Shown in pieces: positions 1 through 29,512 of a stretch of 34,558 nucleotides of DNA (its first letter is position 1; each line of letters begins with the position of its first letter). The DNA lies in the NCBI RefSeq assembly GCF_001194135.2, contig NC_068990.1:90023296-90057853 (forward strand). Direction: 5' to 3'. The notes beneath the pieces were generated by a model. It saw only the letters and a list, made by a program, of their open reading frames with translations. It was not told the DNA's origin and made no database searches. The position numbers and the translations under genes were made by a program. This stretch comes from Octopus bimaculoides (taxonomy: Eukaryota).

Positions 1-365
1 CGATATACATTAAGCGCCGACTACATAAACAAACGATTCTGAAACAATTAACCCTAACCCTAACCCTAACCTTAGGGTTAGGGTTAGGGTTAAAGCAAAT
101 TTAAAATGAAAAAAGCAAATAAAACGAAGAATCGTTTGTTTATGTAGTCGGCACTTAATGTATATCGGCTGAATGGACGTCAGTGATTGGTTGAAATTAT
201 CGAAATAAGACAATTTTTTACATGAAATAAATTCGAATACAAAAATATTTTTCTGTTCTATAACACAAAATAGATAAGTATACGAAGTTTGAAAGTCTTT
301 CGGTACCAAAAACACTACGTAAAACATTAATGAAAAATGTGGCCCCCGTTTTAAAAAAAGATCCA
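1..365. mobile_element. Probable non-autonomous interspersed repeat (Helitron-like?) carrying a telomere-repeat hairpin; runs off the left window edge
   Basis: Short CCCTAA/TTAGGG hairpin at 48-93, then a unique AT-rich body ending abruptly at an (ATAG)n tract. Resemblance to an octopus repeat is from memory only and the class is not established from the sequence. Confidence 0.3.
48..93. repeat. Inverted telomeric hexamer array (TAACCC)3 / (TTAGGG)3
   Basis: Arms 48-69 TTAACCCTAACCCTAACCCTAA and 72-93 TTAGGGTTAGGGTTAGGGTTAA are exact reverse complements with a CC loop. Confidence 0.95.
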
Positions 366-908: not shown

Positions 909-1428
909 NNNNNNNNNNNNNNNNNNNNNNNNNNNNNNNNNNNNNNNNNNNNNNNNNNNNNNNNNNNNNNNNNNNNNNNNNNNNNNNNNNNNNNNNNNNN
1001 NNNNNNNNNNNNNNNNNNNNNNNNNNNNNNNNNNNNNNNNNNNNNNNNNNNNNNNNNNNNNNNNNNNNNNNNNNNNNNNNNNNNNNNNNNNNNNNNNNNN
1101 NNNNNNNNNNNNNNNNNNNNNNNNNNNNNNNNNNNNNNNNNNNNNNNNNNNNNNNNNNNNNNNNNNNNNNNNNNNNNNNNNNNNNNNNNNNNNNNNNNNN
1201 NNNNNNNNNNNNNNNNNNNNNNNNNNNNNNNNNNNNNNNNNNNNNNNNNNNNNNNNNNNNNNNNNNNNNNNNNNNNNNNNNNNNNNNNNNNNNNNNNNNN
1301 NNNNNNNNNNNNNNNNNNNNNNNNNNNNNNNNNNNNNNNNNNNNNNNNNNNNNNNNNNNNNNNNNNNNNNNNNNNNNNNNNNNNNNNNNNNNNNNNNNNN
1401 NNNNNNNNNNNNNNNNNNNNNNNNNNNN

Positions 1429-3446: not shown

Positions 3447-3658
3447 GGCGGAGAGTTTGCAGAAACGTGAGCACGCCGGGCGAAATGCTTGGCGGTATTT
3501 CGTCTGTCTTTACGTTCTGAGTTCAAATTCCACCGAGGTTGACTTTGCCTTTCATCCTTTCGGGATCGATAAATTAAATACAAGTTGCGTACTGGGATCG
3601 ATTTAATCGACTGGTTCCCTCCCCCAAAATTTCGGGCCTTGTGCCTAGAGTAGAAACG
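3447..3658 (+). mobile_element. Full-length tRNA-derived SINE (family A) with 20-bp target-site duplication
   Basis: A-box-like head, B-box GAGTTCAAATTCC, matches many copies in the window; flanked by identical TATATATTTCGAACACTAAA at 3427-3446 and 3659-3678. Confidence 0.92.
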
Positions 3659-3734
3659 TATATATTTCGAACACTAAATTTCCAAATATATTTATTACAG
3701 AAAAGTCTTGATATCTCTTTCTTACATATCACTG

Positions 3735-4041
3735 GGTGGAGGCGCAATGGCCCAGTGGTTAGGGCAGCGGACTCGCGGTTTCGATTCCCAGATCTGGCGT
3801 TGTGAGTGTTTGTTGAGCGAAAACGCCTAAAGCTTCACGAGGCTCCGGCAGGATGTGGTGGCGAACCCTGCTGTATTCTTTCACCACAACTTTCTCTCGC
3901 TGTTTCTGTTGTACCTGTGTCACGCTGAATCTCCCCGAGAACTACGTGGAGTGCTCAGCTACTTGCACGTTAATTTCACGAGCAGGCTGTTCCGTTGAGC
4001 GGATCCACTGGAACTCTCGTCGTCGTAACCGACGGAGTGCC
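3735..4041 (+). mobile_element. tRNA-derived SINE (family C), internally deleted copy
   Basis: A box TGGCCCAGTGGTTAG, B box GGTTTCGATTCCC; colinear with 14640-15006 apart from four short deletions. Confidence 0.9.
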
Positions 4042-4439
4042 TCGACGACATATCTAGATCTATATACACATACAAATGTGTTCCCCTTTTCCTTCATGTC
4101 TAACTATTTCGTCTACATCTAGCAAAGAAAGACAGCTGCTGTCCTGATAACGTCTCTAGAAGTAGAAACCTATGCCTACTGCTGTCATCTTTTCTCCAGG
4201 CAATCATTCTGTTTTCTCCTCAATGGAACGTCACTTATTGAGAAATTCTTGATTCTAGATATTATCTTCCTTTCTCCACCAGATGATTGTTTAACCCTTT
4301 CTAGAAGCAGAGATGTAATTTCAATAAATCAATGTCATGTTGTATGGTAATTAATGCATCTTTATTCGACTATGCTTTTCAAAGTCATGTCATTAACCAC
4401 TGAGCCATTTCTCTTGGTGCATTTTTATCTATATATAAG

Positions 4440-4680: not shown

Positions 4681-5852
4681 TGCATATATTATATATACAC
4701 ATGGTATTGCAAGCAAGCGCACACACAGAGAGTTTGTAATGGAAACAGTGTGAAGACAAACCAAATTTGGAAGCTATTCCCATCCCCACCTCCCCAAATC
4801 TCTCAACAAGACAAACACATGTTTTATTATTCACAACTGTTTGTCTATATTATTACTCATCTCTTTTCTCATCGTTTATAATTGCTTTTCCTCGTAGACA
4901 GATTTGATGTTTTTAAGGTCGAGGAAGGTGGGGGGGGGGAGTCTAAAACGAGGTGGTCGTGGTTTCCATTCATTACTGCGTTGGTTTTAATTTCGTCGTT
5001 TTCCGCTAATGCGATTACTATTCAAATGGTCAAATATTGAAATGATCTGGAGAAAGCGGAGGAGGGAGAATATCCCGTGCGCATACGCACGCACGCACGC
5101 ACGCGCGGACGGACGGAGCCGCGTACCAGTCCGTTCAAGATGTATTTATTTGTTCGTTCAAATACTGCTTGTCTTCATCCATCAGAGAAATGTAAAATAT
5201 AAGGAAATGCACTCGAGTGACTACAACAACAACAGCAACAAAATCTACTACTACTACTACTACTTCATTTACGCATTCTTCACCGTCACCCTCTCCATCA
5301 AAGTCGTCATCATCATCATCATCATCATCAACTATCCAATTTAGTATTCTTAAGAGACCTCTTAGCCATGTTTAGAAATCTCATTTCTCAAGTTTCTCCC
5401 TCGCCGCTGCCCTCTACTTACACTACGCCACAGCAAAGCACAGNNNNNNNNNNNNNNNNNNNNNNNNNNNNNNNNNNNNNNNNNNNNNNNNNNNNNNNNN
5501 NNNNNNNNNNNNNNNNNNNNNNNNNNNNNNNNNNNNNNNNNNNNNNNNNNNNNNNNNNNNNNNNNNNNNNNNNNNNNNNNNNNNNNNNNNNNNNNNNNNN
5601 NNNNNNNNNNNNNNNNNNNNNNNNNNNNNNNNNNNNNNNNNNNNNNNNNNNNNNNNNNNNNNNNNNNNNNNNNNNNNNNNNNNNNNNNNNNNNNNNNNNN
5701 NNNNNNNNNNNNNNNNNNNNNNNNNNNNNNNNNNNNNNNNNNNNNNNNNNNNNNNNNNNNNNNNNNNNNNNNNNNNNNNNNNNNNNNNNNNNNNNNNNNN
5801 NNNNNNNNNNNNNNNNNNNNNNNNNNNNNNNNNNNNNNNNNNNNNNNNNNNN

Positions 5853-6299: not shown

Positions 6300-6540
6300 C
6301 ATTGTTGCTGTTCTGTCGTTGTTTAACCCCAGGTCATTCCTATATGGGACTATGATCAATAGAAGCCTTTAATCCGTAACCATCCTGCTTTATTTTTCTT
6401 TCAGTAATTGTCATTCTTAATTTGCATTATCCATTGTGGCTTCCTAATTCAAGATGGTAGGGTGCAGTTTAAAAGAGATTTAGCTATTTGACTACTATTT
6501 CTAGAAGTTTAAACAGCCACGTTGAGGTTGGTGTGGCTAA
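6300..6540 (-). mobile_element. SINE-like repeat (family D), diverged
   Basis: Shares CTATTTCTAG and AACCCCAGGTCA blocks (reverse) with 21235-21450 and 24700-25240; (AAC)n-like tail. Confidence 0.55.
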
Positions 6541-6814: not shown

Positions 6815-7700
6815 TAAATAATTTATTCTTTTAATTAGCCACAAAGGATTACATAAAATAACAACAGGACAATACAAAAGGGTTTTTAAATCGTGTAAAC
6901 AAAAAAAAACAAAAACAAAAAAAACAATGAAAATCAAACGAACTCTCAAAAAGGGGAAGCGATTTAAAGGTTGCTCATGAAAAAAAAAAACCCCCACAAA
7001 ACCACTTGTGGCCTGACCAACAGGGCAAGAGTCCTCTCCTTGTTTTCTTTTTCACTGGTGCATGCTCAAGACAGGTCCTATCACACTAACCATTTTCCCA
7101 ACATTCACCCACCTTTCAACAAGTTTGCTAGAATATAACGCTTCTCTCACCACACTCACTTTCCTTTTCAAGTGAAACTTGAAAAAGTTGAGGAGGGTTT
7201 GGCCAAAGAGAAAAGTGTCTGTCGTCAGCCCTTTCAAGCGTGTCCACCACACAACTTCTTTTGCTACAACCATCAGACAAATGAAAATTGCCTGGTCCTC
7301 CTGACCGAAGGAGGGCGGCGGGGAAATCCTCACTATGGATTGAGTCGATAGCCGGATCCGTCCTACACGTGACAGCTAGTGTTCGACATAAACCCACAGG
7401 TCAGCAATGTTCGATCACTGGACGAATGCGTGCAGGACGGATTTGTCGCTCTGCGCGGAACCCCGGGCAGGCTCGGCTGACGGCGTTTCCGTGCCTGTAA
7501 AGTTTATCGCGAACAGATGTCGTCCTCCGGTAGCACTGACAGGCCAGGGATTTCTGGAGGTTATTCATAGGCCCCGGCCCGAAAGTCCTTCGGATCAGAC
7601 TAGTAAACTGATCATCGTCGACGCCCAGAGTTTCCTCGAGAACGTGGGGTTTTGGTCCACAAGTCAGCTCCCCAGAAGAGCAGCTGGCTTGCAAAACAAA
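6815..7700 (-). pseudogene. 5'-truncated L1/Tx1-clade LINE: ORF2 C-terminus (CCHC zinc knuckle) plus T-rich 3' UTR
   Basis: Minus frames read LQKSLACQCYRRTTSVRDKLYRHGNAVSRACP(fs)AQSDKSVLHAFVQ*SNIADLW...VAKEVVWWTRLKG...VERW. This is a CX2CX8HX4C-type knuckle with frameshift and stops; AATAAA near 6822; homologous to 18255-19130. Confidence 0.85.
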
Positions 7701-8774: not shown

Positions 8775-8915
8775 AGTTCTGAGTTCAAATCTCACCGAGG
8801 TGAACTTCGATTTTCTTCCTTTCGAGGTCGATAGAACAAAGTATCAGTCAAGTATTGAGACCCATGTTATCGACTTACCACTTTTCCCAATATTTTAGGC
8901 TTTGTGCTTAGGGTA
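8775..8915 (+). mobile_element. SINE family A 3' fragment
   Basis: GTTCTGAGTTCAAATCTCACCGAGG through GGCTTTGTGC. Confidence 0.8.
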
Positions 8916-10164: not shown

Positions 10165-10387
10165 NNNNNNNNNNNNNNNNNNNNNNNNNNNNNNNNNNNN
10201 NNNNNNNNNNNNNNNNNNNNNNNNNNNNNNNNNNNNNNNNNNNNNNNNNNNNNNNNNNNNNNNNNNNNNNNNNNNNNNNNNNNNNNNNNNNNNNNNNNNN
10301 NNNNNNNNNNNNNNNNNNNNNNNNNNNNNNNNNNNNNNNNNNNNNNNNNNNNNNNNNNNNNNNNNNNNNNNNNNNNNNNNNNNNNNN

Positions 10388-10462
<75 letters not shown>

Positions 10463-12314
10463 ATGTATATATAGTCGTATATATATATGAAACTGCGTTT
10501 GTTTGTTAATGTTTATGTGCTTTATTATAGCTCACAAATATACACGCATTCACGTACCTGTGTATACATAAAACTGTTTGATTGTAACACACAGACACAG
10601 TTATGCTTAAATATGTTTGTAGGAAAGCTTGGAAAACTCACGGAACTGTATCTTCGCTTCTGATTACCTTCTGAATGGTGCGCGCGCGCGCGCGATAAAT
10701 CAAGATAGAACATGGAAATGATTAACAGAAAAAAGATAAATGATAGATAAACCTTAGAAATCCTCTCATCAGCCATGGAAACCAGAGTATCAGTGCAGTT
10801 TCGGCACGTTTAAAGTCCAAAGGCCTTGCATCTCGATTTTAGATTTTATGAGACTGTTTATACACATGTATATTGATGATCTTCCTATCAATATATTTGG
10901 TTAAACCCAGTTGGCATCAGGATTGTTTTTTCACAATTCCTTACGTGGATATTGCTTCCTCNNNNNNNNNNNNNNNNNNNNNNNNNNNNNNNNNNNNNNN
11001 NNNNNNNNNNNNNNNNNNNNNNNNNNNNNNNNNNNNNNNNNNNNNNNNNNNNNNNNNNNNNNNNNNNNNNNNNNNNNNNNNNNNNNNNNNNNNNNNNNNN
11101 NNNNNNNNNNNNNNNNNNNNNNNNNNNNNNNNNNNNNNNNNNNNNNNNNNNNNNNNNNNNNNNNNNNNNNNNNNNNNNNNNNNNNNNNNNNNNNNNNNNN
11201 NNNNNNNNNNNNNNNNNNNNNNNNNNNNNNNNNNNNNNNNNNNNNNNNNNNNNNNNNNNNNNNNNNNNNNNNNNNNNNNNNNNNNNNNNNNNNNNNNNNN
11301 NNNNNNNNTATTAAAGTTGCAAAAACATCAAAACTTTATTATTGAAGTTGCAAAAACATCAAAATCTCAATCAAATCTGTCCGACGAACGGGAACGTGAA
11401 ACTCTGAGTAGCAGTTTTTTTTTGGTGATTTTTTTTTTTGGTGATTTTTTTTTTTGGTGATATTTTTGCAGCTTTAATAATAAAGTATTTATCTATCTTT
11501 TCTTTTCTCAAAGAAAATATTTCTCCAGCGTTCGCTATTTTACCCTCGTTCTGGTCTAACGACCCTCCATGTTTGTTTTCGTTCGGTTTCCTTGTATGTC
11601 TCCACTGTCCTGTTTTTGTTCCCGACGTTGACCCTCCATAAATCCCAAATTCTATTTTGGTGTTTGTGGGAGCAACTGCCTTCGAAGAGTCATATAGTCG
11701 TTCAATGCTCTAAATGAGGAGCAGATAAACAGCCGACAACTGATGAATTATTTATATTATTATTTCATTGGACGTCATGCATCCATTTCCAAGTATATAT
11801 ATGTATATATATATATATGTATATAGTGTGTGTGTAAATATATAGAAACAGGTATATTTCGGAGTCAAACTTGATTGAAAACGCAAGATCCACCTGGTAT
11901 TCCCGTCCTCCACATGTCAACAATGTCACAATGTGACTGCATAGATAAAATATTCAATTTCTGGCCCGTAGACTGTCTTCTAATACTACTACTCTGATCT
12001 CTGTTCGTCACGAGCTGGCTGCTCTCTTGCCGCTCCCCACCAGGTTCTTCCCACACATTTGTTTCTTTTCTCTTTTGTCAGCCATATTATGCCCACTCCT
12101 TATAGGCTCCGCAGTAACAAATCTAGGCCACTACTTACCCTACAACTAAATTTACTAAAATGGAATACATTTCTTCCTCCTTTGTTAATTTTTCTTTCTG
12201 TTTTTTTTTTTGCGGTTACATTAATTTTTATTTATTCAAAGAAATTATTAACTGCGTCTCAATCCCTCCGACTTTTTCCGAACAAACTAATAGCAGAAAC
12301 AATGTCTATGTATA

Positions 12315-12540
12315 TCGAGCTGGCAGAAACGTTAGCACGCCGGGTGAATTGCTTCGCGGTATTTCGTCTGCTATTACATTCTGAGTTCAAATTCCGCTGA
12401 GGTCGACTTTGCCTTTCATCCTTTCGGGGTCGAGGTTACGCACTGGGATCGAAGTAATCGACTTAATCCATTTGTCTGTCCTTGTTTGTCCCCTCTGTGT
12501 GTAGCCCCTTGTGGGCAATAAAGAAATAAGAAACTGTTTT
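12315..12540 (+). mobile_element. SINE family A variant with an alternative 3' end
   Basis: Head GAGCTGGCAGAAACGTTAGCACGCCGGG, B box GAGTTCAAATTCC; 3' part differs from 3447-3658. Confidence 0.85.
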
Positions 12541-14035: not shown

Positions 14036-14639
14036 TACCATTATATTTGTAGTGAAGTGACTTATGTAGCGGTGGTATAACAACAGCTGTCACAACTTAT
14101 CATCTCACCGACTTTATTCTTGTAACTATTCTGATTTTTCCTTAACAGGAAAAAAAAAAAAAGCAACAAAAACACATAAGNNNNNNNNNNNNNNNNNNNN
14201 NNNNNNNNNNNNNNNNNNNNNNNNNNNNNNNNNNNNNNNNNNNNNNNNNNNNNNNNNNNNNNNNNNNNNNNNNNNNNNNNNNNNNNNNNNNNNNNNNNNN
14301 NNNNNNNNNNNNNNNNNNNNNNNNNNNNNNNNNNNNNNNNNNNNNNNNNNNNNNNNNNNNNNNNNNNNNNNNNNNNNNNNNNNNNNNNNNNNNNNNTAAT
14401 CTTAACTATTTGCCATATATTTGACAAATGTTGCTAAGAGTACGCCAATGCTACCACGGTTCTTTGGTCGTATTCTTTTGATGGAATGGACTGGCGAAGG
14501 AAATTATGTTCAAATGATATCTTTTAGTAAATAATGTGGAGATATCATACGTACACGCGCACACGTAGAGTCTGTCCCATAGAATGTATCGTAATTAGGC
14601 TCTCAGTCAACATATATTGTCTGGTATATCTACTATGTG

Positions 14640-15006
14640 GCAGCGCAATGGTCCAATGGTTGTGGCAGCGGGCTCGCGGTCGTAGGATCGCGGTTTCGAT
14701 TCCCAGACCGAGCGTTGTGAGTGTTTATTGAGCGAATACACTTAAAAGCTCCACGAGGCTCCGGTAGGGGGTAGTGGCGAACCCTGCTGTACTCTCTCAC
14801 CACAATTTTCTTTCACTCTTTCTTCCTGTTTCTGTTGTACCTGTATTTCAAAGGGACAGCCTTGTCATGCTGAATCTCCCTGAGAACTACGTTAAAGGTA
14901 CACGTATCTGTGGTGTGCTCAGCGACTTGAACGTTAATTTCACGAGCAGGCTGTTCCGTTGATCGGATCAGCTGGAACCCTCGTCGTCGTAACCGACGGA
15001 GTACCA
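14640..15006 (+). mobile_element. tRNA-derived SINE (family C), full length
   Basis: A/B boxes; colinear with 3735-4041; flanked by ATATCTACTAT (14626-14636) and ATATCTTCTAT (15009-15019), a likely TSD with one mismatch. Confidence 0.9.
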
Positions 15007-15405
15007 CGATATCTTCTATAGTATAACAGTGAGACTGAACTGTTAGCAGTGTACTAGTAATTTGCTGTTCAAACGTGCGCATTGTTGTATCTTGGGAGGG
15101 TCATTATGCCAATAATAGACACACACATTGGTTCTGATTCACTCTTATTATTACTAGTCAATTGGTTAACCATTTAACCAACTAACTGATCGATTGTTTT
15201 GTTGATTGATCAGACGATCAATCAGTCGGCTAAATTTATCAAAATCCTTTCGTCGATTTCGCAGCCTCATCAGTGACATGCCCCCCCCCGGGTGATTTCC
15301 TTGAGAAGCATTGTGTACGTGGGAAAACATAAAAATGATTATTTAATGCTTTCTTCCGTTCCTTTTTTTTTCACGGGACATTAAGTTATCATCTATAATC
15401 AATTT

Positions 15406-16770: not shown

Positions 16771-16944
16771 TTATAGGCGTTAGCACTACTCCGAGGTGTT
16801 GATGGGAACTTACCATGGAATTAAATGGTTTTGATTTACTGTTAGGTGAGTTTTGGCCAACCCTGTGTGTAATTGTACCGAACGCGAGGGAATGCAACTC
16901 TCGAAGCGAGCCTTTTAAAAACAGATTCAGCTGCATATCATATG

Positions 16945-17095
16945 ATTTCATAATATATACGACGGGCTTCTTTCATTTTCCGTCTACCAAATCCACTCAC
17001 AAGGCTTTGGTCGACTATGAGGCTGTAGCAGAAGTCACTTTCCCAAGGTGCCACGCAGCTGGACTGAACCCGGAACTATGTGGTTGAGAAGCAAA
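16945..17095 (-). mobile_element. CORE-like SINE
   Basis: CCGTCTACCAAATCCACTCACAAGGCTTTGG...CCCAAGGTGCCACGCAG...ACTGAACCCGGAAC; homologous to 27170-27335. Confidence 0.8.
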
Positions 17096-17153
17096 TAATA
17101 TATATTGCGTGTGTGTGTGTCTGACCTCTACTACATTGCTTCCAAATACAAAT

Positions 17154-17184
<31 letters not shown>

Positions 17185-17939
17185 NNNNNNNNNNNNNNNN
17201 NNNNNNNNNNNNNNNNNNNNNNNNNNNNNNNNNNNNNNNNNNNNNNNNNNNNNNNNNNNNNNNNNNNNNNNNNNNNNNNNNNNNNNNNNNNNNNNNNNNN
17301 NNNNNNNNNNNNNNNNNNNNNNNNNNNNNNNNNNNNNNNNNNNNNNNNNNNNNNNNNNNNNNNNNNNNNNNNNNNNNNNNNNNNNNNNNNNNNNNNNNNN
17401 NNNNNNNNNNNNNNNNNNNNNNNNNNNNNNNNNNNNNNNNNNNNNNNNNNNNNNNNNNNNNNNNNNNNNNNNNNNNNNNNNNNNNNNNNNNNNNNNNNNN
17501 NNNAAAAAAAAAAAAAAAAAAAAAAAATGAAAAGAAAACAACAGAAGACACAGGATAAACAAAATGATGAGGAAACGTTCCAATTAGAGAATAGCCACCA
17601 GACGCCAGTCAGAGAATCCTGCAGAGCTGGTTTAGTCTTACAGTCAACAGTAAGTTCCCCACCTCTCAGTTTATGGTCCCCAGCTGTAGTTCCCCGTTTA
17701 TTCGGACCGTACCCGCCACTCTCATCCACCTTTTCGCTGGGAGACAATACAACCCCTCTCCCCCACTCTTCTCTCTTCTCTTCTTAAATTAGGAACAGAA
17801 GTTGGTGACAGCTTGGTCGGAGAGTAAATTGTCCTCATTTCTTTCAAACTTGTCCAGTATATAGTCCTTTTCTATTTTTCTGCAGCACTGGGATCTTCAC
17901 GATAGAATCGGTTGACAAATGAATGTAGGTGTTCGACGT

Positions 17940-18254: not shown

Positions 18255-19130
18255 CTATCTCTGGAAGGTCAGGTAGTGGTGACGAACGCCTTCATGATCT
18301 TCATCATCTGTTATCGTCTGACGTCTTGCTTTGTCTCAGTTCACGTCCGACTGATCTGGAACGTCAGCTCTTTCGCTTTTTGTAGAGGGAGCGCGCTTTA
18401 CTGGTCAAGCGTTCCATTTGCTATTAACATCTGCTGCATAGAGGACTGGACATGCTGTGGCTGATGATGCTTTACCATTCGCTGAGGTTATGACCTCTCC
18501 GGCGATTCCTTCGACGGTCAGCAAATGTGGCCAGCATTTGTCAGACATGTTTTTCCACAGCTAGTCATTTGACAGATTTGCAGTTCAGGGCCCAACAAAG
18601 ACCTCACAGCTCTCTACCACTTGGGCAGTGAGGCAGGTGAAAGTTCCACGTTGGTGTCCTGTAGAGGATTAGTGGTGGACAATAGTGACGACGTTCTCGG
18701 GGAAACCCTGGTTTTCAATGAAGATCAACTGATTTATTCCGGAGGACTTTCAAACAGGGACCCATGGGTAATATTTCCAGAAATCCCTGACCTGACATTA
18801 CTATAGGAGTGTACAGTTGGTTTAAAATGAACCCTGCAAACAAGGAAATGTTGTCAGTCAGGCCCGTCCGAAGTGTGCGCAGGGCAAGGAAACAGTTTTG
18901 CACGCCCTCGTCTAGTGCCCGAGCAATGCTAGCTGCTCTTACGTGCTATCAGCTGAGTCCATTGCGGAAATCATCCCACCGCCTTTTTATCTATCAGGTG
19001 GCCTTGCTAAAAGAGGTTGGGTGGCTAATGAAATTGAATAGGCCGAAAATAGATAACTTCTTTGTTTTGGTCGAGTCCTCATCAATGTTTTTCTAGTTTC
19101 ATTTCAAAATGTGTTATTTTACTGGGTAGA
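18255..19130 (+). pseudogene. L1/Tx1-clade LINE ORF2 remnant (post-RT region to C-terminus)
   Basis: Broken frames: LSLEGQVVVTNAF..ICYRL, ERQLFRFL*R..LVKRSIC..RGLDM, DDVLGETL, FQKSL, RPKCAQGKETVLHALV*CPS (CCHC knuckle 18865-18920), LKEVGW. Same family as 6815-7700. Confidence 0.85.
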
Positions 19131-19764: not shown

Positions 19765-19925
19765 GCCGGCAGAATCCTGAGCACGCCGGGCAAAATGCTT
19801 AGCGACATTGCGTCTGTCGCTACGTCCTGAGTTCCAATTCTGCCGAGGTGGCCTTTGCATCCTTTCGGAGTCGATAAATTAAGTACCAGTGAAACACTGA
19901 GGTCGGTGTAATTGACTAGAATTGT
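19765..19925 (+). mobile_element. SINE family A
   Basis: GCGAGCCGGCAGAATCCTGAGCACGCCGGGC...TCGATAAATTAAGTACCAGT. Confidence 0.85.
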
Positions 19926-20799
19926 TTTGAGCTGAGTGGGGGTGCTAGATTCCCTTGTTCGAAAATATANNNNNNNNNNACACACACACACACACATCTT
20001 TGCTACATATAAATTTATTTCTTGTATTTTTTTCATCCGTTCTGACAGCCTAGAGAAAGTGTCTCATTTCTCCGCATTTCATTCGTCAAAAAAACTCTTT
20101 TAAAATATCAGCAGAGATGCATAACAGGTTAGTTTGAAGTAACACTTTGATGGTGTTGTGGTTGTTATTGGTTGAGTTTCGGTCGGTTGATTTTCATTTA
20201 AAAGAAAAAGAAAAGTGTCGTCATGTCTAATGTAAACGGGTTCATTTAGTAAACTCCGTCTTATTTAATCAAATTGTTCAGTGGATTTCGAGGTAATTTT
20301 CAATACCAGTTTTGGTCTTATTTCTTTATAGTTTATTTTCCTTTTCACACCAACTCTGAACTAAGTGGGAACAGAACAGTCAGTACAAGTCGGAAATAGT
20401 GTTTTATGTAACAAAATTTAACTACAAAGTAAGGCTTTTTTGTGTTCGCGGATAACTTTGTTGTCTTTTATATTTTTTAGTTTTTCTTTCTTTTCATATT
20501 CCATTCATATTTTCCTTTCGTTTTCTCCATTCTTTATCTTTCCATCTTCATTCTTTCTTGCCGTCTTTCTTTTTCTTTCTTCTTCCCCCCCCCACCCATC
20601 CTTCATGTTCTATTTACCAGAATTTTACGTGTTACCAGGACAAGGTCTCGGGTTACTGGCGTCACAGTATTTCGTTATAGTAACCATACAAAGATATTTT
20701 TATAATTTTCGCCAGTGACAAAAACCTACAAATGCGAGAATTAAATATTTATTGCAATTTATTAAATACAGGAATAGGATCTTTGTCATCTTGTCTCCT

Positions 20800-21929: not shown

Positions 21930-22150
21930 TTTGACAGAATCGTTAACACGCCGGGCGAAATGCTTAGCGATATTTCGTCTGTCCTTACGTTCTGAGTTCA
22001 AATTCCGCCGAGGTCGACTTTACCTTTTATCCTTTCGGGGTCGATAAATTAAGTGCCAGTTGCATACTGGGGTCGACCTAATCNNNNNNNNNNNNNNNNN
22101 NNNNNNNNNNNNNNNNNNNAATTTCGGGCTTTGTGCCTATAGTAGAAAAT
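21930..22150 (+). mobile_element. SINE family A (young copy spanning the 36-N gap)
   Basis: Close match to 3447-3658. Confidence 0.9.
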
Positions 22151-22458: not shown

Positions 22459-23249
22459 CATGTANNNNNNNNNNNNNNNNNNNNNNNNNNNNNNNNNNNN
22501 NNNNNNNNNNNNNNNNNNNNNNNNNNNNNNNNNNNNNNNNNNNNNNNNNNNNNNNNNNNNNNNNNNNNNNNNNNNNNNNNNNNNNNNNNNNNNNNNNNNN
22601 NNNNNNNNNNNNNNNNNNNNNNNNNNNNNNNNNNNNNNNNNNNNNNNNNNNNNNNNNNNNNNNNNNNNNNNNNNNNNNNNNNNNNNNNNNNNNNNNNNNN
22701 NNNNNNNNNNNNNNNNNNNNNNNNNNNNNNNNNNNNNNNNNNNNNNNNNNNNNNNNNNNNNNNNNNNNNNNNNNNNNNNNNNNNNNNNNNNNNNNNNNNN
22801 NNNNNNNNNNNNNNNNNNNNNNNNNNNNNNNNNNNNNNNNNNNNNNNNNNNNNNNNNNNNNNNNNNNNNNNNNNNNNNNNNNNNNNNNNNNNNNNNNNNN
22901 NNNNNNNNNNNNNNNNNNNNNNNNNNNNNNNNNNNNNNNNNNNNNNNNNNNNNNNNNNNNNNNNNNNNNNNNNNNNNNNNNNNNNNNNNNNNNNNNNNNN
23001 NNNNNNNNNNNNNNNNNNNNNNNNNNNNNNNNNNNNNNNNNNNNNNNNNNNNNNNNNNNNNNNNNTATATATATATATATATATATATATGTACATATAA
23101 AAAAAGAATGAATGAGACCTCGATATTATGTAAGTAGAGGAATTTATCTGTAATATAATGACAATTATTATAGCAACCGAATAATTGTCACATATTATAT
23201 TACAAATATATATACATGTATGTATGTATGTATTTGCCCTGCCCACGCA

Positions 23250-23700
23250 CACACACATACTCAACTCCTCTTCACACTCACGTTTGGTCCTACTTCATCA
23301 CAACCACGCTTTCTTCACACACAACTTTCACCCGGATACAATACCCCACACCCCACTAATCAACGTCACCATACTTACGTACTTCCACTCTCCTACACAC
23401 ATAACTCCGCACATCATTTCCCCCAAATGCTCGCTTCCAGACTACGATGTATTCCTACACTTGCACAACACGCCTTACCTTTCCCCTTTTTTAACCATCG
23501 TAGAACCGCATTACCTCTTGGTTTCTAACTCTTCGCCTGTTTGCTGTTTTCTTCTCTCTGACTATCCCTCTTCTCGCTCCTGTTATGTTTTTCTCTTTCT
23601 TTTGGTGAAGTCCTGACGTCCGAAACGTTAAGACGTTTCGTTTTTTCATTAAAGCTTTGTCCTTCCTGTGTTGTCTTTTTATTGTTCATTGTACTTACCG
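23250..23700 (+). mobile_element. Probable Penelope-like element 3' end with hammerhead relic at 23598-23633
   Basis: QLLFTLTFGPTSSQPRF weakly resembles a PLE GIY-YIG C-terminus; pyrimidine-rich tract; TCTT-TTGGTGA-A-...-GAAACGTT-AAGA. Confidence 0.45.
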
Positions 23701-23786
23701 TCTCTTATACACTCACACACACACGTACAACGAGGCAACGTACAACGAGGGTATTTTGCTGACTATTTCTAGCTGATCGTGCGACT

Positions 23787-23812
23787 CTTTTACCATATCG
23801 ATATGGTAAAAG
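23787..23812. repeat. Perfect 26-bp palindrome
   Basis: CTTTTACCATATC|GATATGGTAAAAG. Confidence 0.97.
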
Positions 23813-24090
23813 GATTTAACTTGAGACAAAAAAAAACCCCTTGACTAATCATAAAAACTACTGTTCTAATTAAATATAAAGATCCCTTATTTGGTATATG
23901 CATAAAAATCCCGAGTTCCGATAAAGCATAAAGAGCCCTTTATTTTTATTGGGCACATCGCGGCCTTCTGCGTGATCACTCGGCTTGAGACAGAGATCAA
24001 ATCTCCATCAACTCACTTCCTAAAGTCCTAAATAAGAACACACCAGGTGATGTTCTACATACGTCCAGGTAGTGGGCCCTTACCATTGGT

Positions 24091-24386
24091 CAGTTGGATC
24101 AGGATCGATTTGGAGCTAAGCAACAGTAACTAAACATTAAGGCTCTACGTTTAAGTAAGCAGAAAGACCCGATATTTAAGTTGACATACATACCAGCAAC
24201 GTTTACGGGTTCAAACCAGAAAGGAAAAAAAATCTGTGAACGCACAACCTTGAATTACTAAAGGACACAATGGAAAATATAGCAAGGTAGCTTTGCCAAC
24301 TTAAATATAGGGTCTTCTTGCCTACTTAAATGTAGGGGCTTAATGTCTAGTTACTGTTTACCGCCATATCAAATCTGATCCAACTG
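24091..24386. mobile_element. MITE-like foldback: ~105-bp arms, ~84-bp spacer
   Basis: 24091-24197 aligns with the reverse complement of 24282-24386 at roughly 80% by hand; termini CAGTTGGATC / GATCCAACTG; GGT on both flanks. Confidence 0.65.
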
Positions 24387-25093
24387 GGTCCGATCTTACT
24401 GCATTCTACTTTGAGCTAATGTCTTATTTCCTATAGTTTCGTGTCGTCCCGGGATCTGTGAGGGGAAATGGATAGGTGAAAACTGGGAAGAGGCTCACTA
24501 GATGGGCTATACCTGTAATTCAGCCAACCTTAACACACGGAGACCCTCGATTCGGTCTACTCAACCATTAATATGAAAATTTAATAAGTGCATAGTTCAC
24601 TTGATCAAACAGTTGAATGGTCATCATCGAAGTCAATAAGGGTTCACGATTTCAAGTTAAATCCTTTCACCATATCGATCATATGATTATATCGAACTAA
24701 CAAGGGAATCGCTATAGAGTCGCTCGATCAGCTAGAAATAGCTAGCAAAATACCCTCGTTATGTCTTAGCATCTTCGAAAAAGGAAGGCCTCGTTGGATA
24801 ATAGAGAAAAATACATTTGATACTGTAGATGGATCTCTGTCGACTTCGACGATGACCATTCAGCTGTTTGATCAAGTGAACTATGCACTTATTAAATTTT
24901 CATATTAATGGTTGAGTAGACCGAATCGAGGGTCCCCGTGTGTTAAGGTTGGCTGAATTACAGGTATAGTCCATCCAGTGAGCCTCTTCTTAGTTTTCAC
25001 CTATCCATTTCCCTTCACAGAACCCGGGATGACACGAAACTATAGGAAATAAGACATTAAGCTCAAAGTAGAATGCAGTAAGATCGAACCCAG
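24384..25093. repeat. Long inverted repeat: arms 24384-24634 and 24842-25093, 207-bp spacer
   Basis: Hand alignment: 11 substitutions and one 1-bp indel over about 251 bp (~95%). Confidence 0.97.
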
Positions 25094-25240
25094 GACCGCG
25101 TGATAGCAAAGTGAACTAAACCATTCAGTCATGTGGTATTAAACACATAATGCTGGAAAATACAAAATGTGATAGCAAAAGCTAGAACATCTTTGATCAG
25201 GTCTACTCAGTCAGTGTTGACCTGTGGTTAAACAACAGAA
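24700..25240 (+). mobile_element. Family D SINE interrupted by an old minus-strand CORE-like SINE (24842-25135)
   Basis: Family D 5' motifs at 24716-24800 and its 3' end TGACCTGTGGTTAAACAAC at about 25218-25236. Reverse tRNA head GATCGAACCCAGGACCGCGTG at 25082-25102. Confidence 0.55.
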
Positions 25241-25303
25241 GCAGCGTCTTGTAGTAAAAGGTAGCAAAGCGTTGAACGAAATATCTTAAGGCAATTTACT
25301 TAA

Positions 25304-25520
25304 CCCATTAAGTCCCACTGTCCTATAAATAGGACACTAAATGGGAATATTAAATAAGCTATATCACATTGTCTCAATGTCCAAGGACACCGAGTATTTC
25401 CATTTCTACTTGAAGTAAAGGAATTTTAATAATGATTTTTTTCTTCATTTTAACGTATTTTCAATCATTTGTAAAAATTTAAAAGTAATATTCAGAAATT
25501 TAAGTACTCCGGGACTTGGG
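25304..25520. mobile_element. piggyBac-like MITE
   Basis: TTAA at 25300-25303 and 25521-25524; termini CCCATTAAGTCCC / GGGACTTGGG (3-bp deletion in the right TIR); subterminal hairpin TGTCCTAT-AA-ATAGGACA. Confidence 0.6.
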
Positions 25521-26815
25521 TTAAGTGCTTTTCCCTTCTGAGGTTCGATTCCACAGATGCCAGCTTTTTCCATCCAACTGTGGTCGATGAAATGAAGCGT
25601 CCAACAAGTATTTGCGTCGACCCCGTTTTTACTTCACCCTCATTTCAAATATATGAAGCTTTGTACAAAACCTAGACATCAATAACTATGATTGAAGTGT
25701 GTTGGTCTGATTGTCAGAAGTGCGTATTTACTTTCGCTATAGCACACAAATGAATTGTACTTTAAAAATGCATTAGTGTTATTCCCCAAGGCAATACCTG
25801 TACACGTAGAGCTTTATTGAGCAAACATATTGGATCGAATTCAAAACAGTTTTACTACTGAGAAATAAATATATTCATGAGGTAGTCATCACAAAAAAAA
25901 AAAAAAAAAAAGTTATAAATTGCCGAATTGAAGTTAACGGGAGAGCACTTTGTAATAAAGTTGTTCCCCTTGAAAAAGTACAGCCGTTTGTCGTCGTCAT
26001 CGTCATCGTCATCGTTCACAATTGTTTGCATTCATTCACGTTTTCTTTCTTCCTTTCTTTTCTTTTATCTCCCCCCCTCCTCTCTTTCTCACAAACGAAA
26101 TTTTTTTTACTTAAATTGAATCTGTGAACTTCTTTAGACATGTCCCAAACTGCCGTTCCACCGCCTTTTCACTTTCACAATCACCATACGATAATGTTGG
26201 CGGCGCACTTTATTTATGCTTCGATCGGTTTTTAGAAGGCGACACAGTTTACCCCTGATACGATGTTTATAAATCCGGGATTTGTACCAGCTTCGGTTTT
26301 CATTATTATAATGATATAATTATAAATGTNNNNNNNNNNNNNNNNNNNNNNNNNNNNNNNNNNNNNNNNNNNNNNNNNNNNNNNNNNNNNNNNNNNNNNN
26401 NNNNNNNNNNNNNNNNNNNNNNNNNNNNNNNNNNNNNNNNNNNNNNNNNNNNNNNNNNNNNNNNNNNNNNNNNNNNNNNNNNNNNNNNNNNNNNNNNNNN
26501 NNNNNNNNNNNNNNNNNNNNNNNNNNNNNNNNNNNNNNNNNNNNNNNNNNNNNNNNNNNNNNNNNNNNNNNNNNNNNNNNNNNNNNNNNNNNNNNNNNNN
26601 NNNNNNNNNNNNNNNNNNNNNNNNNNNNNNNNNNNNNNNNNNNNNNNNNNNNNNNNNNNNNNNNNNNNNNNNNNNNNNNNNNNNNNNNNNNNNNNNNNNN
26701 NNNNNNNNNNNNNNNNNNNNNNNNNNNNNNNNNNNNNNNNNNNNNNNNNNNNNNNNNNNNNNNNNNNNNNNNNNNNNNNNNNNNNNNNNNNNNNNNNNNN
26801 NNNNNNNNNNNNNNN

Positions 26816-26852
<37 letters not shown>

Positions 26853-27169
26853 CGCGTGCGCTTGCTTTGCTTTGCTTTGCTTGTTTCAGTCCAGACGAGC
26901 TGACAACAGATTCCACTCCCAACTTGATTTGTTAATCTCAGCAGGATTTGAATTCAGGTTATAATAATGCATTTATCATCATGCGTTTTAACGTCCACTT
27001 TTCCATGCTTGCATGGGTCAGAAGGAATTTGGGGGTGAAACAAAGGATAGCACTCGTCCGAAAGTGACACTCGTTTACATCTAAATCATGAGGCAAAGTG
27101 AGCAAGGAGATTACAACTCGCACACACACACACACAACACACACATGCTTGCACGCACACACACACACA

Positions 27170-27335
27170 CACACACGACGGACTTCCACACAGTTTCTAT
27201 CTACAAAAACCCACTCACAATGCATCGGTTGGCCCGGGTCTATTGTTGATGACACTTGCCCAATGTGCCATGCAGTGGGATCGAACCTGAAACCACAGAT
27301 TTGCAAAGTGAGCTCCTTAACCACCCAGTCATGCT
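27170..27335 (-). mobile_element. CORE-like SINE
   Basis: Homologous to 16945-17095; reverse B box GGATCGAACC. Confidence 0.8.
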
Positions 27336-27877
27336 TTCAAACAGTCCGTGCTGTTCACTGCATCAATCTCCATCGATGCTCTCTGCTTTCTTAGGGTGGT
27401 GGTATTTGAAGCATCCTAGATGAGGTTGCCATCCCCTCATCCTGCCCTCCTGTGTTTCTTGGAAGCAGAGGCTATTATGGGGAGTATGAAAGCCCAAAAT
27501 ATATATACATGGTACACTGAATAAAACAGAAGAGAGAACAGGGAACAGTAAAAGGGCCATAAAGAGCAAAGGAATGAAATATAAAACTAGTTAATAATGC
27601 TTCTAATGTTATTCTACGAAGAGTTAGTAGTACTGGGCTGTTGGGGGTGGGTGGGGGTGAAACGAACACAGGGAAATCAGCTTTCGTTATTGGTTCGTTG
27701 TGAATGCATCTGCGTGTGTATGTTTTCCCGTGTAGAAACCTATATGAATATGCATGTGTGTATGTATATGCATATATGTGTGTGTATATAGAGGCCTAAA
27801 TGAATGTACGTGTGTGTGTGTGTGTACTGTTTTCCTGTGTAGAGGCCTATGTGAATATCCGCGCGCGTGTGTGTGTG

Positions 27878-29221: not shown

Positions 29222-29512
29222 CATCATCATCATCATCATCATCATTGTTTAACATCCGCTTTCCATGCTGGCATGGGTTGGACGGTTTGACTGATGACTA
29301 GCAATCCGGGAGGCTGTACCATGCGCCAATCTGATCTGGCTGAGTTTCTACAGCTGGATGCCCTTCCTAACGCCAACCACTCCAAGAGTATAGTGGGTAC
29401 TGTTTAAATGCTGAAGGCATGGGAGCCAGTCAGGCGGCACTGACATCGACCATGCTCGAATGGTGCTTCTTATGTGCCACCAGCACGGGTGCCAGTCAGG
29501 CGACACCGGCAC
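29222..29512 (-). mobile_element. SINE family B with (CAT)n tail and an internal tandem duplication
   Basis: Matches 1429-1572; GCCAGTCAGGCG(G/A)CAC unit occurs twice, at about 29427 and 29491. Confidence 0.8.

What the first reader, a model, noticed from the sequence alone, without database searches (positions are those of the whole stretch)
24384..25093. 250-bp, ~95% identical foldback made by local inverted duplication of an old SINE
Seen: the arms differ at 11 substitutions plus 1 indel, and 10 of the 11 are transitions, so a + transcript would fold with 6 G-U wobbles, 4 A-C mismatches and 1 A-A mismatch. The arms are far closer to each other than to other CORE-like copies (16945, 27170), so these are not two independent insertions. 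The right arm keeps the tRNA head and sits inside a family D SINE, so it is the parent. Established: long imperfect duplexes with A-C mismatches are ADAR and Dicer substrates, and coleoids edit heavily. Inference: a hyper-editing or hairpin-siRNA locus.
Basis: partly seen in the sequence, partly recalled or inferred. Interest (0 to 1): 0.7.

Follow-up and report, generated by a model that had tools for sequence, protein, structure and literature searches.

The report
Inverted partial SINE copy forming a hairpin
A 252-base internal piece of an old SINE was copied in reverse about 200 bases from its source, so a transcript through it would fold into a long RNA hairpin; the structure is real but of a common kind, and whether it is transcribed or edited could not be tested here.

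Summary
Arms 24384-24634 and 24842-25093 are inverted copies with 11 substitutions (10 transitions) and 1 indel, separated by a 207-nt spacer. The predicted hairpin is about -490 kcal/mol on either strand (z about -44).

The right arm belongs to a tRNA-type SINE on the minus strand. That SINE keeps its head (25094 to about 25148) and runs 12-22 nt past the arm's inner end. It is nested in an older repeat. The left arm lacks both ends of this SINE and abuts an older 296-nt palindrome. This fits a DNA-level local inverted duplication better than a second retroposition, a mobile foldback element or an assembly artefact. It is not proven, because no other copy of the family could be obtained from any collection.

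The functional reading is untested: the tool that finds sequencing runs was closed. The SINE's own Pol III transcript would stop at a TTTTT between the arms, so a hairpin needs Pol II read-through. If the locus is transcribed, ADAR hyper-editing is the expected fate. The siRNA route is disfavoured, because molluscs are reported to lack DICER2 and siAGO.

Near-perfect local inverted repeats are reported as unusually frequent in octopus. This is an ordinary member of a known class, of low interest.

The parts
24384..24634 (+). Left arm: partial inverted copy of the SINE body (SINE sense on + strand). It starts 3 nt before the B-box-like site (GGTCCGATCTT, 24387-24397). It has no head, no 3' end and no tail.
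24635..24841 (.). 207-nt spacer (hairpin loop). It holds 17 nt of unassigned sequence (24635-24651), the 3' part of the older host repeat (24652 to about 24819) and the last 12-22 nt of the parent SINE (about 24820/24830-24841).
24842..25093 (-). Right arm: the body of the parent SINE (SINE sense on the minus strand), source of the duplication.
25094..25148 (-). Head of the parent SINE, outside the repeat. It carries an A-box-like TGACTGAATGG at 25131-25121 (2 mismatches). It is homologous to the head of the SINE at 27165-27375. The 5' limit is uncertain by about 15 nt.
   Evidence: no tRNA call by ARAGORN or Rfam
24820..24841 (-). 3' end of the parent SINE insert that is absent from the left arm (12-22 nt). 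It does not align to the host-repeat copy at 6307-6504.
24807..24811 (-). TTTTT run on the SINE-sense (minus) strand, between the right and left arms. It looks like a Pol III terminator, so a transcript from the SINE's own promoter would not reach the left arm.
   Evidence: Pol III termination at T runs is established knowledge
24652..24819 (-). 3' part of the older host repeat into which the parent SINE is nested. 24652-24760 is an inverted copy of 23744-23824.
25146..25245 (-). 5' part of the older host repeat. Joined to 24819 downwards, it aligns across the junction to 6307-6504 (62% identity, E 2.5e-4). The outer limit is approximate.
24091..24386 (.). Older 296-nt palindrome (arms about 69% alike; DNA hairpin -63.7 kcal/mol, z -11). 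Its right end overlaps the first 3 nt (CTG) of the left arm: the outer junction of the duplication.
23744..23824 (+). Second, 5'-truncated copy of the host repeat's 3' part. It is followed by an A9 run. It pairs with 24652-24760 in the spacer.

Best explanation
A tRNA-type SINE, distantly related to the CORE-type SINEs elsewhere in the window, inserted on the minus strand at about 24820/24830-25148 inside an older repeat. Later, an internal 252-bp block of it (25093 down to 24842) was copied in reverse orientation and placed 207 bp away, directly against a pre-existing 296-bp palindrome.

The copy has neither the SINE's 5' head nor its 3' end, neither tail nor target-site duplication, and it has sharp junctions. 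It was therefore made at the DNA level. The most likely route is a replication template switch or fold-back repair event (inferred), possibly triggered by fork stalling at the adjoining palindrome (speculative).

Since then both arms have drifted neutrally to 4.6% divergence (K2P). The element has no demonstrated function.

If the locus lies inside a Pol II transcript of either strand, the RNA would fold into a duplex of about 250 bp with a 207-nt loop. In an animal with active ADARs such a duplex would be promiscuously A-to-I edited, preferentially at the A-C mismatches. It would be one of very many such substrates in the genome.
For: Shown:
- Repeat geometry and differences.
- Fold.
- The right arm continues into a head with A- and B-box-like sites 41 nt apart, homologous to another SINE head; the left flank does not.
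- Removing about 24820-25145 restores a sequence that aligns across the junction to 6307-6504 (E 2.5e-4). Including the 22 nt next to the arm lowers that score from 46.5-47 to 39.5.
- No significant direct repeat flanks the parent SINE, and I saw none flanking the left arm.
- The pair is far more alike (95.2%) than any other SINE pair in the window (72-88%), and no third copy of this family is in the 34.5 kb.
- Derived changes lie on both arms when polarised with the two distant SINEs: left 24390 and 24500; right at the partners of 24462 and 24485.
- G-U versus A-C mismatches split 6:4 on the + strand and 4:6 on the - strand, so neither strand is favoured.
- Substitutions are not clustered (P 0.08).
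- A TTTTT run lies between the arms on the SINE-sense strand.

Literature:
- Hyper-editing in animals mostly hits dsRNA from neighbouring inverted repeats. Octopus bimaculoides ranks at the top, with 4.4e-3 of random 50-mers having a >95% inverted partner within 2 kb (PMC5625713).
Against: - No other genomic copy of this SINE family could be obtained, so I cannot show that the arms share private mutations, or that the family's 3' end lies beyond 24842.
- Assigning the 12-22 nt to the SINE rests on one 62%-identical relative of the host repeat.
- Junction microhomology is only 3 nt (CTG) at the outer junction and 0 nt at the inner one.
- There is no empty-site allele or orthologue.
- There is no read-level confirmation of the assembly, which is a gapped short-read scaffold with 10 N runs in the window.
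- There is no expression data, and the window has no recognisable exon, so transcription is unknown.
- The taxon was not verified by any tool.
Confidence: 0.6

Rival explanations
1. Two independent retropositions of one young SINE subfamily landed tail to tail, with the left copy 5'-truncated. They are 95% alike because both are close to the same master copy, or because gene conversion homogenised them.
For: 5' truncation is common in LINE-mediated insertion. Both arms end at the same SINE position on the inner side, as a shared 3' end would. A short A-rich AATAA follows the left arm. The family's true 3' end is not independently known.
Against: - The parent insert seems to run 12-22 nt past the arm end, and the left arm lacks that piece.
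- Neither arm has a simple-repeat or poly(A) tail, and the left arm has no target-site duplication.
- The parent's flanking repeat is not significant (P 0.06).
- No third copy lies in 34.5 kb, although a subfamily dense enough to place two insertions within 460 bp by chance would be expected to leave more.
- All other SINE pairs in the window are 12-28% diverged, so local SINE activity looks old.
Confidence: 0.2
2. Assembly artefact: a short-read assembler joined two SINE copies from different loci, or traversed one copy twice, creating a false foldback.
For: The window is a gapped short-read scaffold with 10 N runs. The arms share exact stretches of up to 71 nt, long enough to merge in a de Bruijn graph.
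Against: - The arms differ at 12 positions, so this is not a chimeric fold-back read or a perfect palindrome artefact.
- The block 23066-26329 has no gap.
- Both ends of the 207-nt spacer are unique sequence that must each abut a SINE copy in opposite orientation.
- The right arm is in a coherent nested-repeat context.
Confidence: 0.08
3. The 710-bp unit is a mobile foldback or MITE-like DNA transposon with 250-bp terminal inverted repeats, present in many copies.
For: It has a long terminal inverted repeat architecture. Another palindromic element lies next to it (24091-24386), and one with 40-nt inverted ends lies at 1-167.
Against: - SINE homology continues 52+ nt beyond the right arm, so the repeat boundary is not an element boundary.
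- No target-site duplication is present.
- No second copy is in the window.
- Public collections gave no hit, though they probably hold no cephalopod DNA.
Confidence: 0.03
4. The locus is a selected hairpin-RNA gene that yields endogenous siRNAs through Dicer, as the Drosophila hpRNA loci do.
For: The long, nearly perfect hairpin has the right geometry.
Against: - Mollusca are reported to lack DICER2 and siRNA-class Argonautes, and no 21-nt duplex signature was found in oyster small RNAs (PMC11114477).
- The substitutions show no sign of selection for pairing on either strand: G-U to A-C is 6:4 versus 4:6.
- No promoter or transcript evidence exists.
Confidence: 0.04

Closest known systems
Inverted SINE pairs as ADAR substrates (human inverted Alu pairs; 'neighbouring inverted repetitive elements' across Metazoa, PMC5625713)
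   Same: Two copies of one SINE lie in opposite orientation within a few hundred bases. The predicted long, nearly perfect intramolecular dsRNA has scattered G-U and A-C positions.
   Different: Here the second copy looks like a local DNA-level partial duplication of the first, rather than an independent insertion. Editing and transcription are not shown.
Palindromic Harbinger repeats of Xenopus tropicalis (PMC5625713)
   Same: A single compact locus folds on itself without needing a distant partner.
   Different: Those are multi-copy DNA transposons whose palindrome is part of the element. This is a single locus, and its right arm is part of a larger SINE.
Template-switch or fold-back inverted duplications (FoSTeS/MMBIR-type events; short template-switch mutations)
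   Same: The inverted copy lies next to its source, has sharp junctions and little microhomology, and respects no element boundaries. A small event of the same type is visible 600 nt upstream (23787-23812).
   Different: The mechanism is inferred from the product only. No ancestral (empty) allele is available.
Drosophila hpRNA loci and mouse oocyte hairpin endo-siRNA loci
   Same: They have long inverted-repeat hairpin geometry.
   Different: The host lineage reportedly lacks the dedicated siRNA machinery (PMC11114477). There is no small-RNA evidence.
CORE-SINE superfamily (MIR, OR1 of octopus; PMC4824008)
   Same: It has a tRNA-type head with a B box followed by a body that aligns at 54-58% to two in-window SINEs.
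   Different: The arms themselves do not match the MIR core significantly (z 1.2). They carry about 150 nt of extra 3' sequence that the abundant family lacks.

Membership tests
ADAR hyper-editing substrate (inverted-repeat dsRNA) | Long (over 100 bp), nearly perfect intramolecular duplex | tested here: met
   251/252-nt arms, 95.2% complementary, MFE about -490 kcal/mol, z -44. It meets the >95%/40-bp/2-kb criterion of PMC5625713.
ADAR hyper-editing substrate (inverted-repeat dsRNA) | Both arms present on one RNA molecule (the locus is transcribed through) | not testable with these tools
The SINE's own Pol III unit would end at TTTTT 24811-24807 before the left arm, so Pol II read-through is required.
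ADAR hyper-editing substrate (inverted-repeat dsRNA) | Clusters of A-to-G differences in RNA versus DNA | not testable with these tools
   No read data were available.
hpRNA / endo-siRNA locus | 21-22-nt small RNAs from both arms with a Dicer duplex signature | not testable with these tools
   No small-RNA data. The literature reports no such signature in a mollusc (PMC11114477).
hpRNA / endo-siRNA locus | Host has siRNA-class Dicer and Argonaute | not tested
   Published survey: DICER2 lost in Trochozoa and siAGO lost in Mollusca (PMC11114477). The taxon of this window was not verified here.
tRNA-derived SINE | 5' head with Pol III A and B boxes at tRNA-like spacing | tested here: inconclusive
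   A-box-like site at 25131-25121 and B-box-like site at 25090-25080, each with 2 mismatches, 41 nt apart. The head aligns to the head of the SINE at 27165-27375. ARAGORN and Rfam tRNA models give no hit.
CORE-SINE superfamily | About 60-bp CORE domain after the head | tested here: inconclusive
The in-window relative at 16930-17125 gives z 6.5, and the one at 27165-27375 carries ACATTGGGCAAGT. Arm versus that relative: 60.7% over 145 nt, E 4.7e-5.
Foldback / MITE-type DNA transposon | The inverted repeats are the element's termini and are flanked by a target-site duplication | tested here: not met
   SINE homology runs 52+ nt beyond the right arm. Flanks ...GATCCAA and GACCGCG... share no duplication.
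Foldback / MITE-type DNA transposon | Multiple copies of the whole unit | tested here: inconclusive
   There are none in the window. External collections gave nothing but probably hold no DNA of this organism.
Retroposed (LINE-mediated) SINE copy, for the left arm | Complete 3' end with tail, flanked by a target-site duplication | tested here: not met
   The left arm stops 12-22 nt short of the parent insert's 3' end. It has no tail and no flanking duplication. Caveat: the family's 3' end is inferred from one locus.
Template-switch / fold-back inverted duplication | The inverted copy lies next to its source, and its breakpoints ignore element boundaries | tested here: met
   207-nt spacer. Both ends of the copy fall inside the SINE.
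Template-switch / fold-back inverted duplication | Microhomology at the junctions | tested here: inconclusive
   3 nt (CTG) at the outer junction with the palindrome's end; none at the inner junction.
Template-switch / fold-back inverted duplication | An ancestral allele or orthologue without the copy | not testable with these tools
   No genome of this or a related species is reachable.

The most novel reading that the evidence does not exclude
Local inverted duplication, seeded where replication stalls at existing palindromes, could be a systematic source of this genome's unusually large stock of near-perfect dsRNA-forming loci. It would not depend on transposon insertion. On that view many ADAR substrates are made in place rather than by chance pairs of SINE insertions.

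The hint is that 1.4 kb here holds three such products of different ages:
- a perfect 26-nt palindrome in which 8 nt copied from the opposite strand replace 36 nt (23787-23812);
- a 69%-identical 296-nt palindrome (24091-24386);
- the 95% foldback, whose outer junction sits exactly at that palindrome's end.

Local inverted repeats in the window are about 12 times more frequent than in dinucleotide shuffles (11 versus 0.9).
Probability: 0.1. Interest if true: 0.5.

Novelty: new member of a known kind. Interest (0 to 1): 0.15.

Why it matters
Very little hangs on this single locus. Inverted repeat pairs are the standard source of long endogenous dsRNA and the main ADAR targets in animals, and they are reported to be especially frequent in octopus. 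The one mildly useful point is about origin. This pair seems to have arisen by local DNA-level inverted duplication of part of a SINE, not by two insertions. If that were common, it would bear on why some genomes carry so much self-dsRNA.

Tried and rejected
No RNA-seq, small-RNA, DNA-read or long-read test was possible, and read laying was not attempted because it needs run ids from that tool.

2. Fishing for other copies of the SINE:
- A six-frame, X-joined translation of 24640-25160 against the 5.8-billion-protein collection gave 0 hits.
- Exact 20/21-mers from the arms against metagenome contigs (two scans) and genome contigs gave 0 hits.
- Exact look-ups of ORFs 24728-24859(-), 23185-23616(+) and 23224-23616(+) gave nothing.
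- These collections evidently hold no DNA of this organism, so the negatives say nothing about copy number.

3. Rfam (gathering threshold on the whole window; E<=1 on 23600-25700) and ARAGORN found no tRNA or other family. The only hits were far-below-threshold plant miRNA hairpin models on the older palindrome.

4. Does the repeat extend across the older palindrome, i.e. was the left arm's head cut off by a MITE insertion? No similarity lies left of 24091.

5. Does the 23744-23824 / 24652-24760 repeat extend into the arms? No: score 11 against a shuffle mean of 10.

6. Target-site duplication of the parent SINE. ATAAT...AAAATACA at 24798-24815 and 25147-25164 matches 14 of 18 positions, but P is 0.06, and the relative at 6307-6504 argues that both halves belong to the host repeat.

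7. 'Edited retrocopy' idea: that the five positions where the left arm has G and the parent has A (SINE sense, 24446-24506) record ADAR editing of an RNA intermediate. Rejected. At 24462 and 24485 the two outgroup SINEs also have G, so the parent arm is the derived one.

8. Excess of transitions (10 of 11). P is 0.03-0.08 for realistic transition fractions, and two of the ten are at CpG sites. Nothing unusual.

9. Gene-conversion tracts. The longest identical run is 71 nt (P 0.28) and clustering gives P 0.08. No signal.

10. Pfam on ten of the longer ORFs of the window gave no domain, so the gene context stays unknown.

Full report
OBSERVATION

The repeat finder gives arms 24417-24634/24842-25059 (218 nt, 95%) and 24384-24417/25060-25093 (34 nt, 97%). 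These are one repeat split by a single-base indel.

A global alignment of 24384-24634 with the reverse complement of 24842-25093 shows the following:
- 11 substitutions, of which 10 are transitions;
- one extra T at 25060;

The spacer is 207 nt (24635-24841). Folded as RNA, the 710 nt give -493.6 kcal/mol on the + strand and -490.9 on the - strand. Shuffles give about -173, so z is about -44. Within the window the match has E = 1e-112. It is the most similar repeat pair of any kind: all other SINE pairs are 72-88% identical. The sequence on the outer and inner sides of both arms is at chance similarity, so the boundaries are sharp.

ANATOMY

On the minus strand the right arm continues for about 52 nt into a SINE head.
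- An A-box-like TGACTGAATGG lies at 25131-25121 and a B-box-like GGTTCGATCTT at 25090-25080. Each has 2 mismatches to the consensus, and they are 41 nt apart.
- The stretch aligns to the head of another SINE at 27165-27375.
- ARAGORN and Rfam do not call a tRNA there, so 'tRNA head' rests on SINE-to-SINE homology and the box motifs.

The first 115 nt or so of the arms align at 54-58% to the two SINEs near 16930-17125 and 27165-27375 (BLAST E 4.7e-5).
- The SINE at 27165-27375 carries ACATTGGGCAAGT, a CORE motif as I recall it.
- The arms themselves do not match that core (z 1.2).
- The octopus OR1 SINE is a published CORE-SINE (PMC4824008).
- 'CORE-like' is therefore only transitively supported.
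- The arms also carry about 150 nt of 3' sequence that those SINEs lack.

The parent SINE is nested in an older repeat.
- Joining the reverse complement of 25146-25330 to that of 24640-24819 gives a sequence that aligns across the junction to 6307-6504 (62% identity, E 2.5e-4).
- A scan of excision boundaries scores best when 24817-24829 and 25146-25164 are the host's edges. Keeping the 22 nt next to the arm lowers the score from 46.5-47 to 39.5.
- So the inserted SINE runs 12-22 nt beyond the arm's inner end.
- The 3' part of the host (24652-24760) has a second, inverted and truncated copy at 23744-23824, followed by an A9 run.

The left arm begins at 24384, 3 nt before the B-box-like site. 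There it overlaps, by CTG, the right end of an older 296-nt palindrome at 24091-24386. That palindrome has arms about 69% alike and a DNA hairpin of -63.7 kcal/mol, z -11.

ORIGIN

The left arm lacks the parent's 5' head and its last 12-22 nt. It has no A-rich or simple-repeat tail beyond AATAA, and no flanking direct repeat. A LINE-mediated copy must keep the 3' end, so a second retroposition fits poorly.

A mobile foldback element is excluded. SINE homology continues past the right arm, and there is no target-site duplication.

A fold-back read or palindrome artefact would be a perfect copy, not one with 12 differences. A mis-join in this gapped short-read scaffold (10 N runs) cannot be ruled out without reads.

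What remains is a DNA-level inverted duplication of an internal block. The known mechanism that yields such products is a template switch during replication or fold-back repair. This step is inferred from the product. Microhomology is only 3 nt at one junction and none at the other.

The copies near 16945 and 27170 belong to another family, so being closer to each other than to those proves nothing. The conclusion is nevertheless probably right.

I could not do the decisive test, which is a subfamily consensus plus an empty site. No collection available here holds this organism's DNA.

AFTER THE DUPLICATION

K2P distance is 0.046. Using the two distant SINEs as outgroups, derived changes fall on both arms: the left arm at 24390 and 24500, and the right arm at the partners of 24462 and 24485. 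That is what independent drift predicts. It also rejects my passing idea that the G-for-A differences record editing of an RNA intermediate.

Other features are unremarkable:
- Ten transitions out of eleven is not remarkable (P 0.03-0.08).
- Two of the ten are at CpG sites.
- Substitutions are not clustered (P 0.08).
- There is no unusually long identical tract (P 0.28).

G-U versus A-C outcomes split 6:4 for the + RNA and 4:6 for the - RNA. There is therefore no sign that pairing on either strand has been selected.

WHAT IT WOULD DO

On the SINE-sense strand a TTTTT run at 24811-24807 lies between the arms. A Pol III transcript from the SINE's own promoter would stop before the left arm and could not form the hairpin. 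A hairpin requires Pol II read-through from a host gene or a non-coding transcript. The window shows no recognisable exon or protein domain, so this is open.

If the locus is transcribed, a duplex of about 250 bp with a 207-nt loop is a textbook promiscuous ADAR substrate. It has roughly 53-55 adenosines per arm that lack a 5' G.

The literature frames this as ordinary.
- Hyper-editing across Metazoa mostly targets dsRNA from neighbouring inverted repeats.
- Octopus bimaculoides has one of the two strongest signals.
- There, 4.4e-3 of random 50-mers have a >95% inverted partner within 2 kb (PMC5625713).
- At that frequency, about 150 nt of such sequence is expected per window of this size.

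The siRNA alternative is disfavoured. DICER2 and siRNA-class Argonautes are reported lost in Mollusca, and no siRNA duplex signature was found in oyster (PMC11114477).

All of this assumes the window is from a cephalopod. The SINE types match what I recall of octopus SINEs, but no tool verified the taxon.

LIMITS

Transcription, editing, small RNAs and read-level support for the assembly are therefore all untested.

VERDICT

- The structural interpretation (local inverted duplication, right arm as parent, nested in an older repeat) is supported but not proven.
- The functional interpretation is a reasonable default expectation for any such repeat, not a finding.
- The locus is a new member of a well-known and, in this lineage, very common class. 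Interest is low.

Noticed in passing
window 1-167: A compact palindromic element cut by the window start. 40-nt inverted ends (1-40 / 128-167, 97.5%) enclose head-to-head telomere-type repeats, (AACCCT)3 joined to (TTAGGG)3 at 48-93. It could be a MITE-like element carrying an interstitial telomeric palindrome.
   Followed up: partly
window 23787-23812: A perfect 26-nt palindrome, CTTTTACCATATCGATATGGTAAAAG, in the repeat copy at 23744-23824. Eight nt (TTTACCAT, the reverse complement of ATGGTAAA at 23803-23810) stand where the sister copy (24680-24715) has 36 nt. This is the footprint of a small template-switch mutation.
   Followed up: yes
window 24091-24386: An older 296-nt palindrome (arms about 69% alike; DNA hairpin z -11) with ends CAGTTGGATC...GATCCAACTG and a possible 3-nt GGT flanking repeat. 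It may be a decayed MITE or an older inverted duplication. It gives weak, far-below-threshold hits to plant miRNA hairpin models in Rfam.
   Followed up: partly
window, whole: Local inverted repeats (BLAST at least 30 bits, partner within 1.5 kb) number 11, against 0.9 expected from dinucleotide shuffles. Six of them lie in 23.7-25.1 kb.
   Followed up: yes
window 909-1428, 5444-5852, 10165-10387, 10962-11308, 14181-14396, 17185-17503, 19970-19979, 22084-22119, 22465-23065, 26330-26815: Ten N runs, most of them next to (CA)n or (TA)n microsatellites, so the sequence is a gapped short-read scaffold. They also produce spurious long 'repeats' in repeat finders.
   Followed up: no
window 3460-3608, 12324-12472, 19770-19918, 21935-22083 (also 8776-8840, 25500-25640): Several copies of another SINE family (motif GTTCTGAGTTCAAATTCC...GTCGACTTTGCCTTTCATCCTTTCGGGGTCGATAAA), 63-88% alike. 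They show the general age of SINE insertions in this region.
   Followed up: no
window 3726-4045 / 14626-15009; 7403-7645 / 18691-18930; 1429-1571 / 29226-29368: Further dispersed repeat pairs (74% direct, 67% inverted and 87% inverted) of unidentified element types. ORFs in and near two of them gave no Pfam domain.
   Followed up: partly
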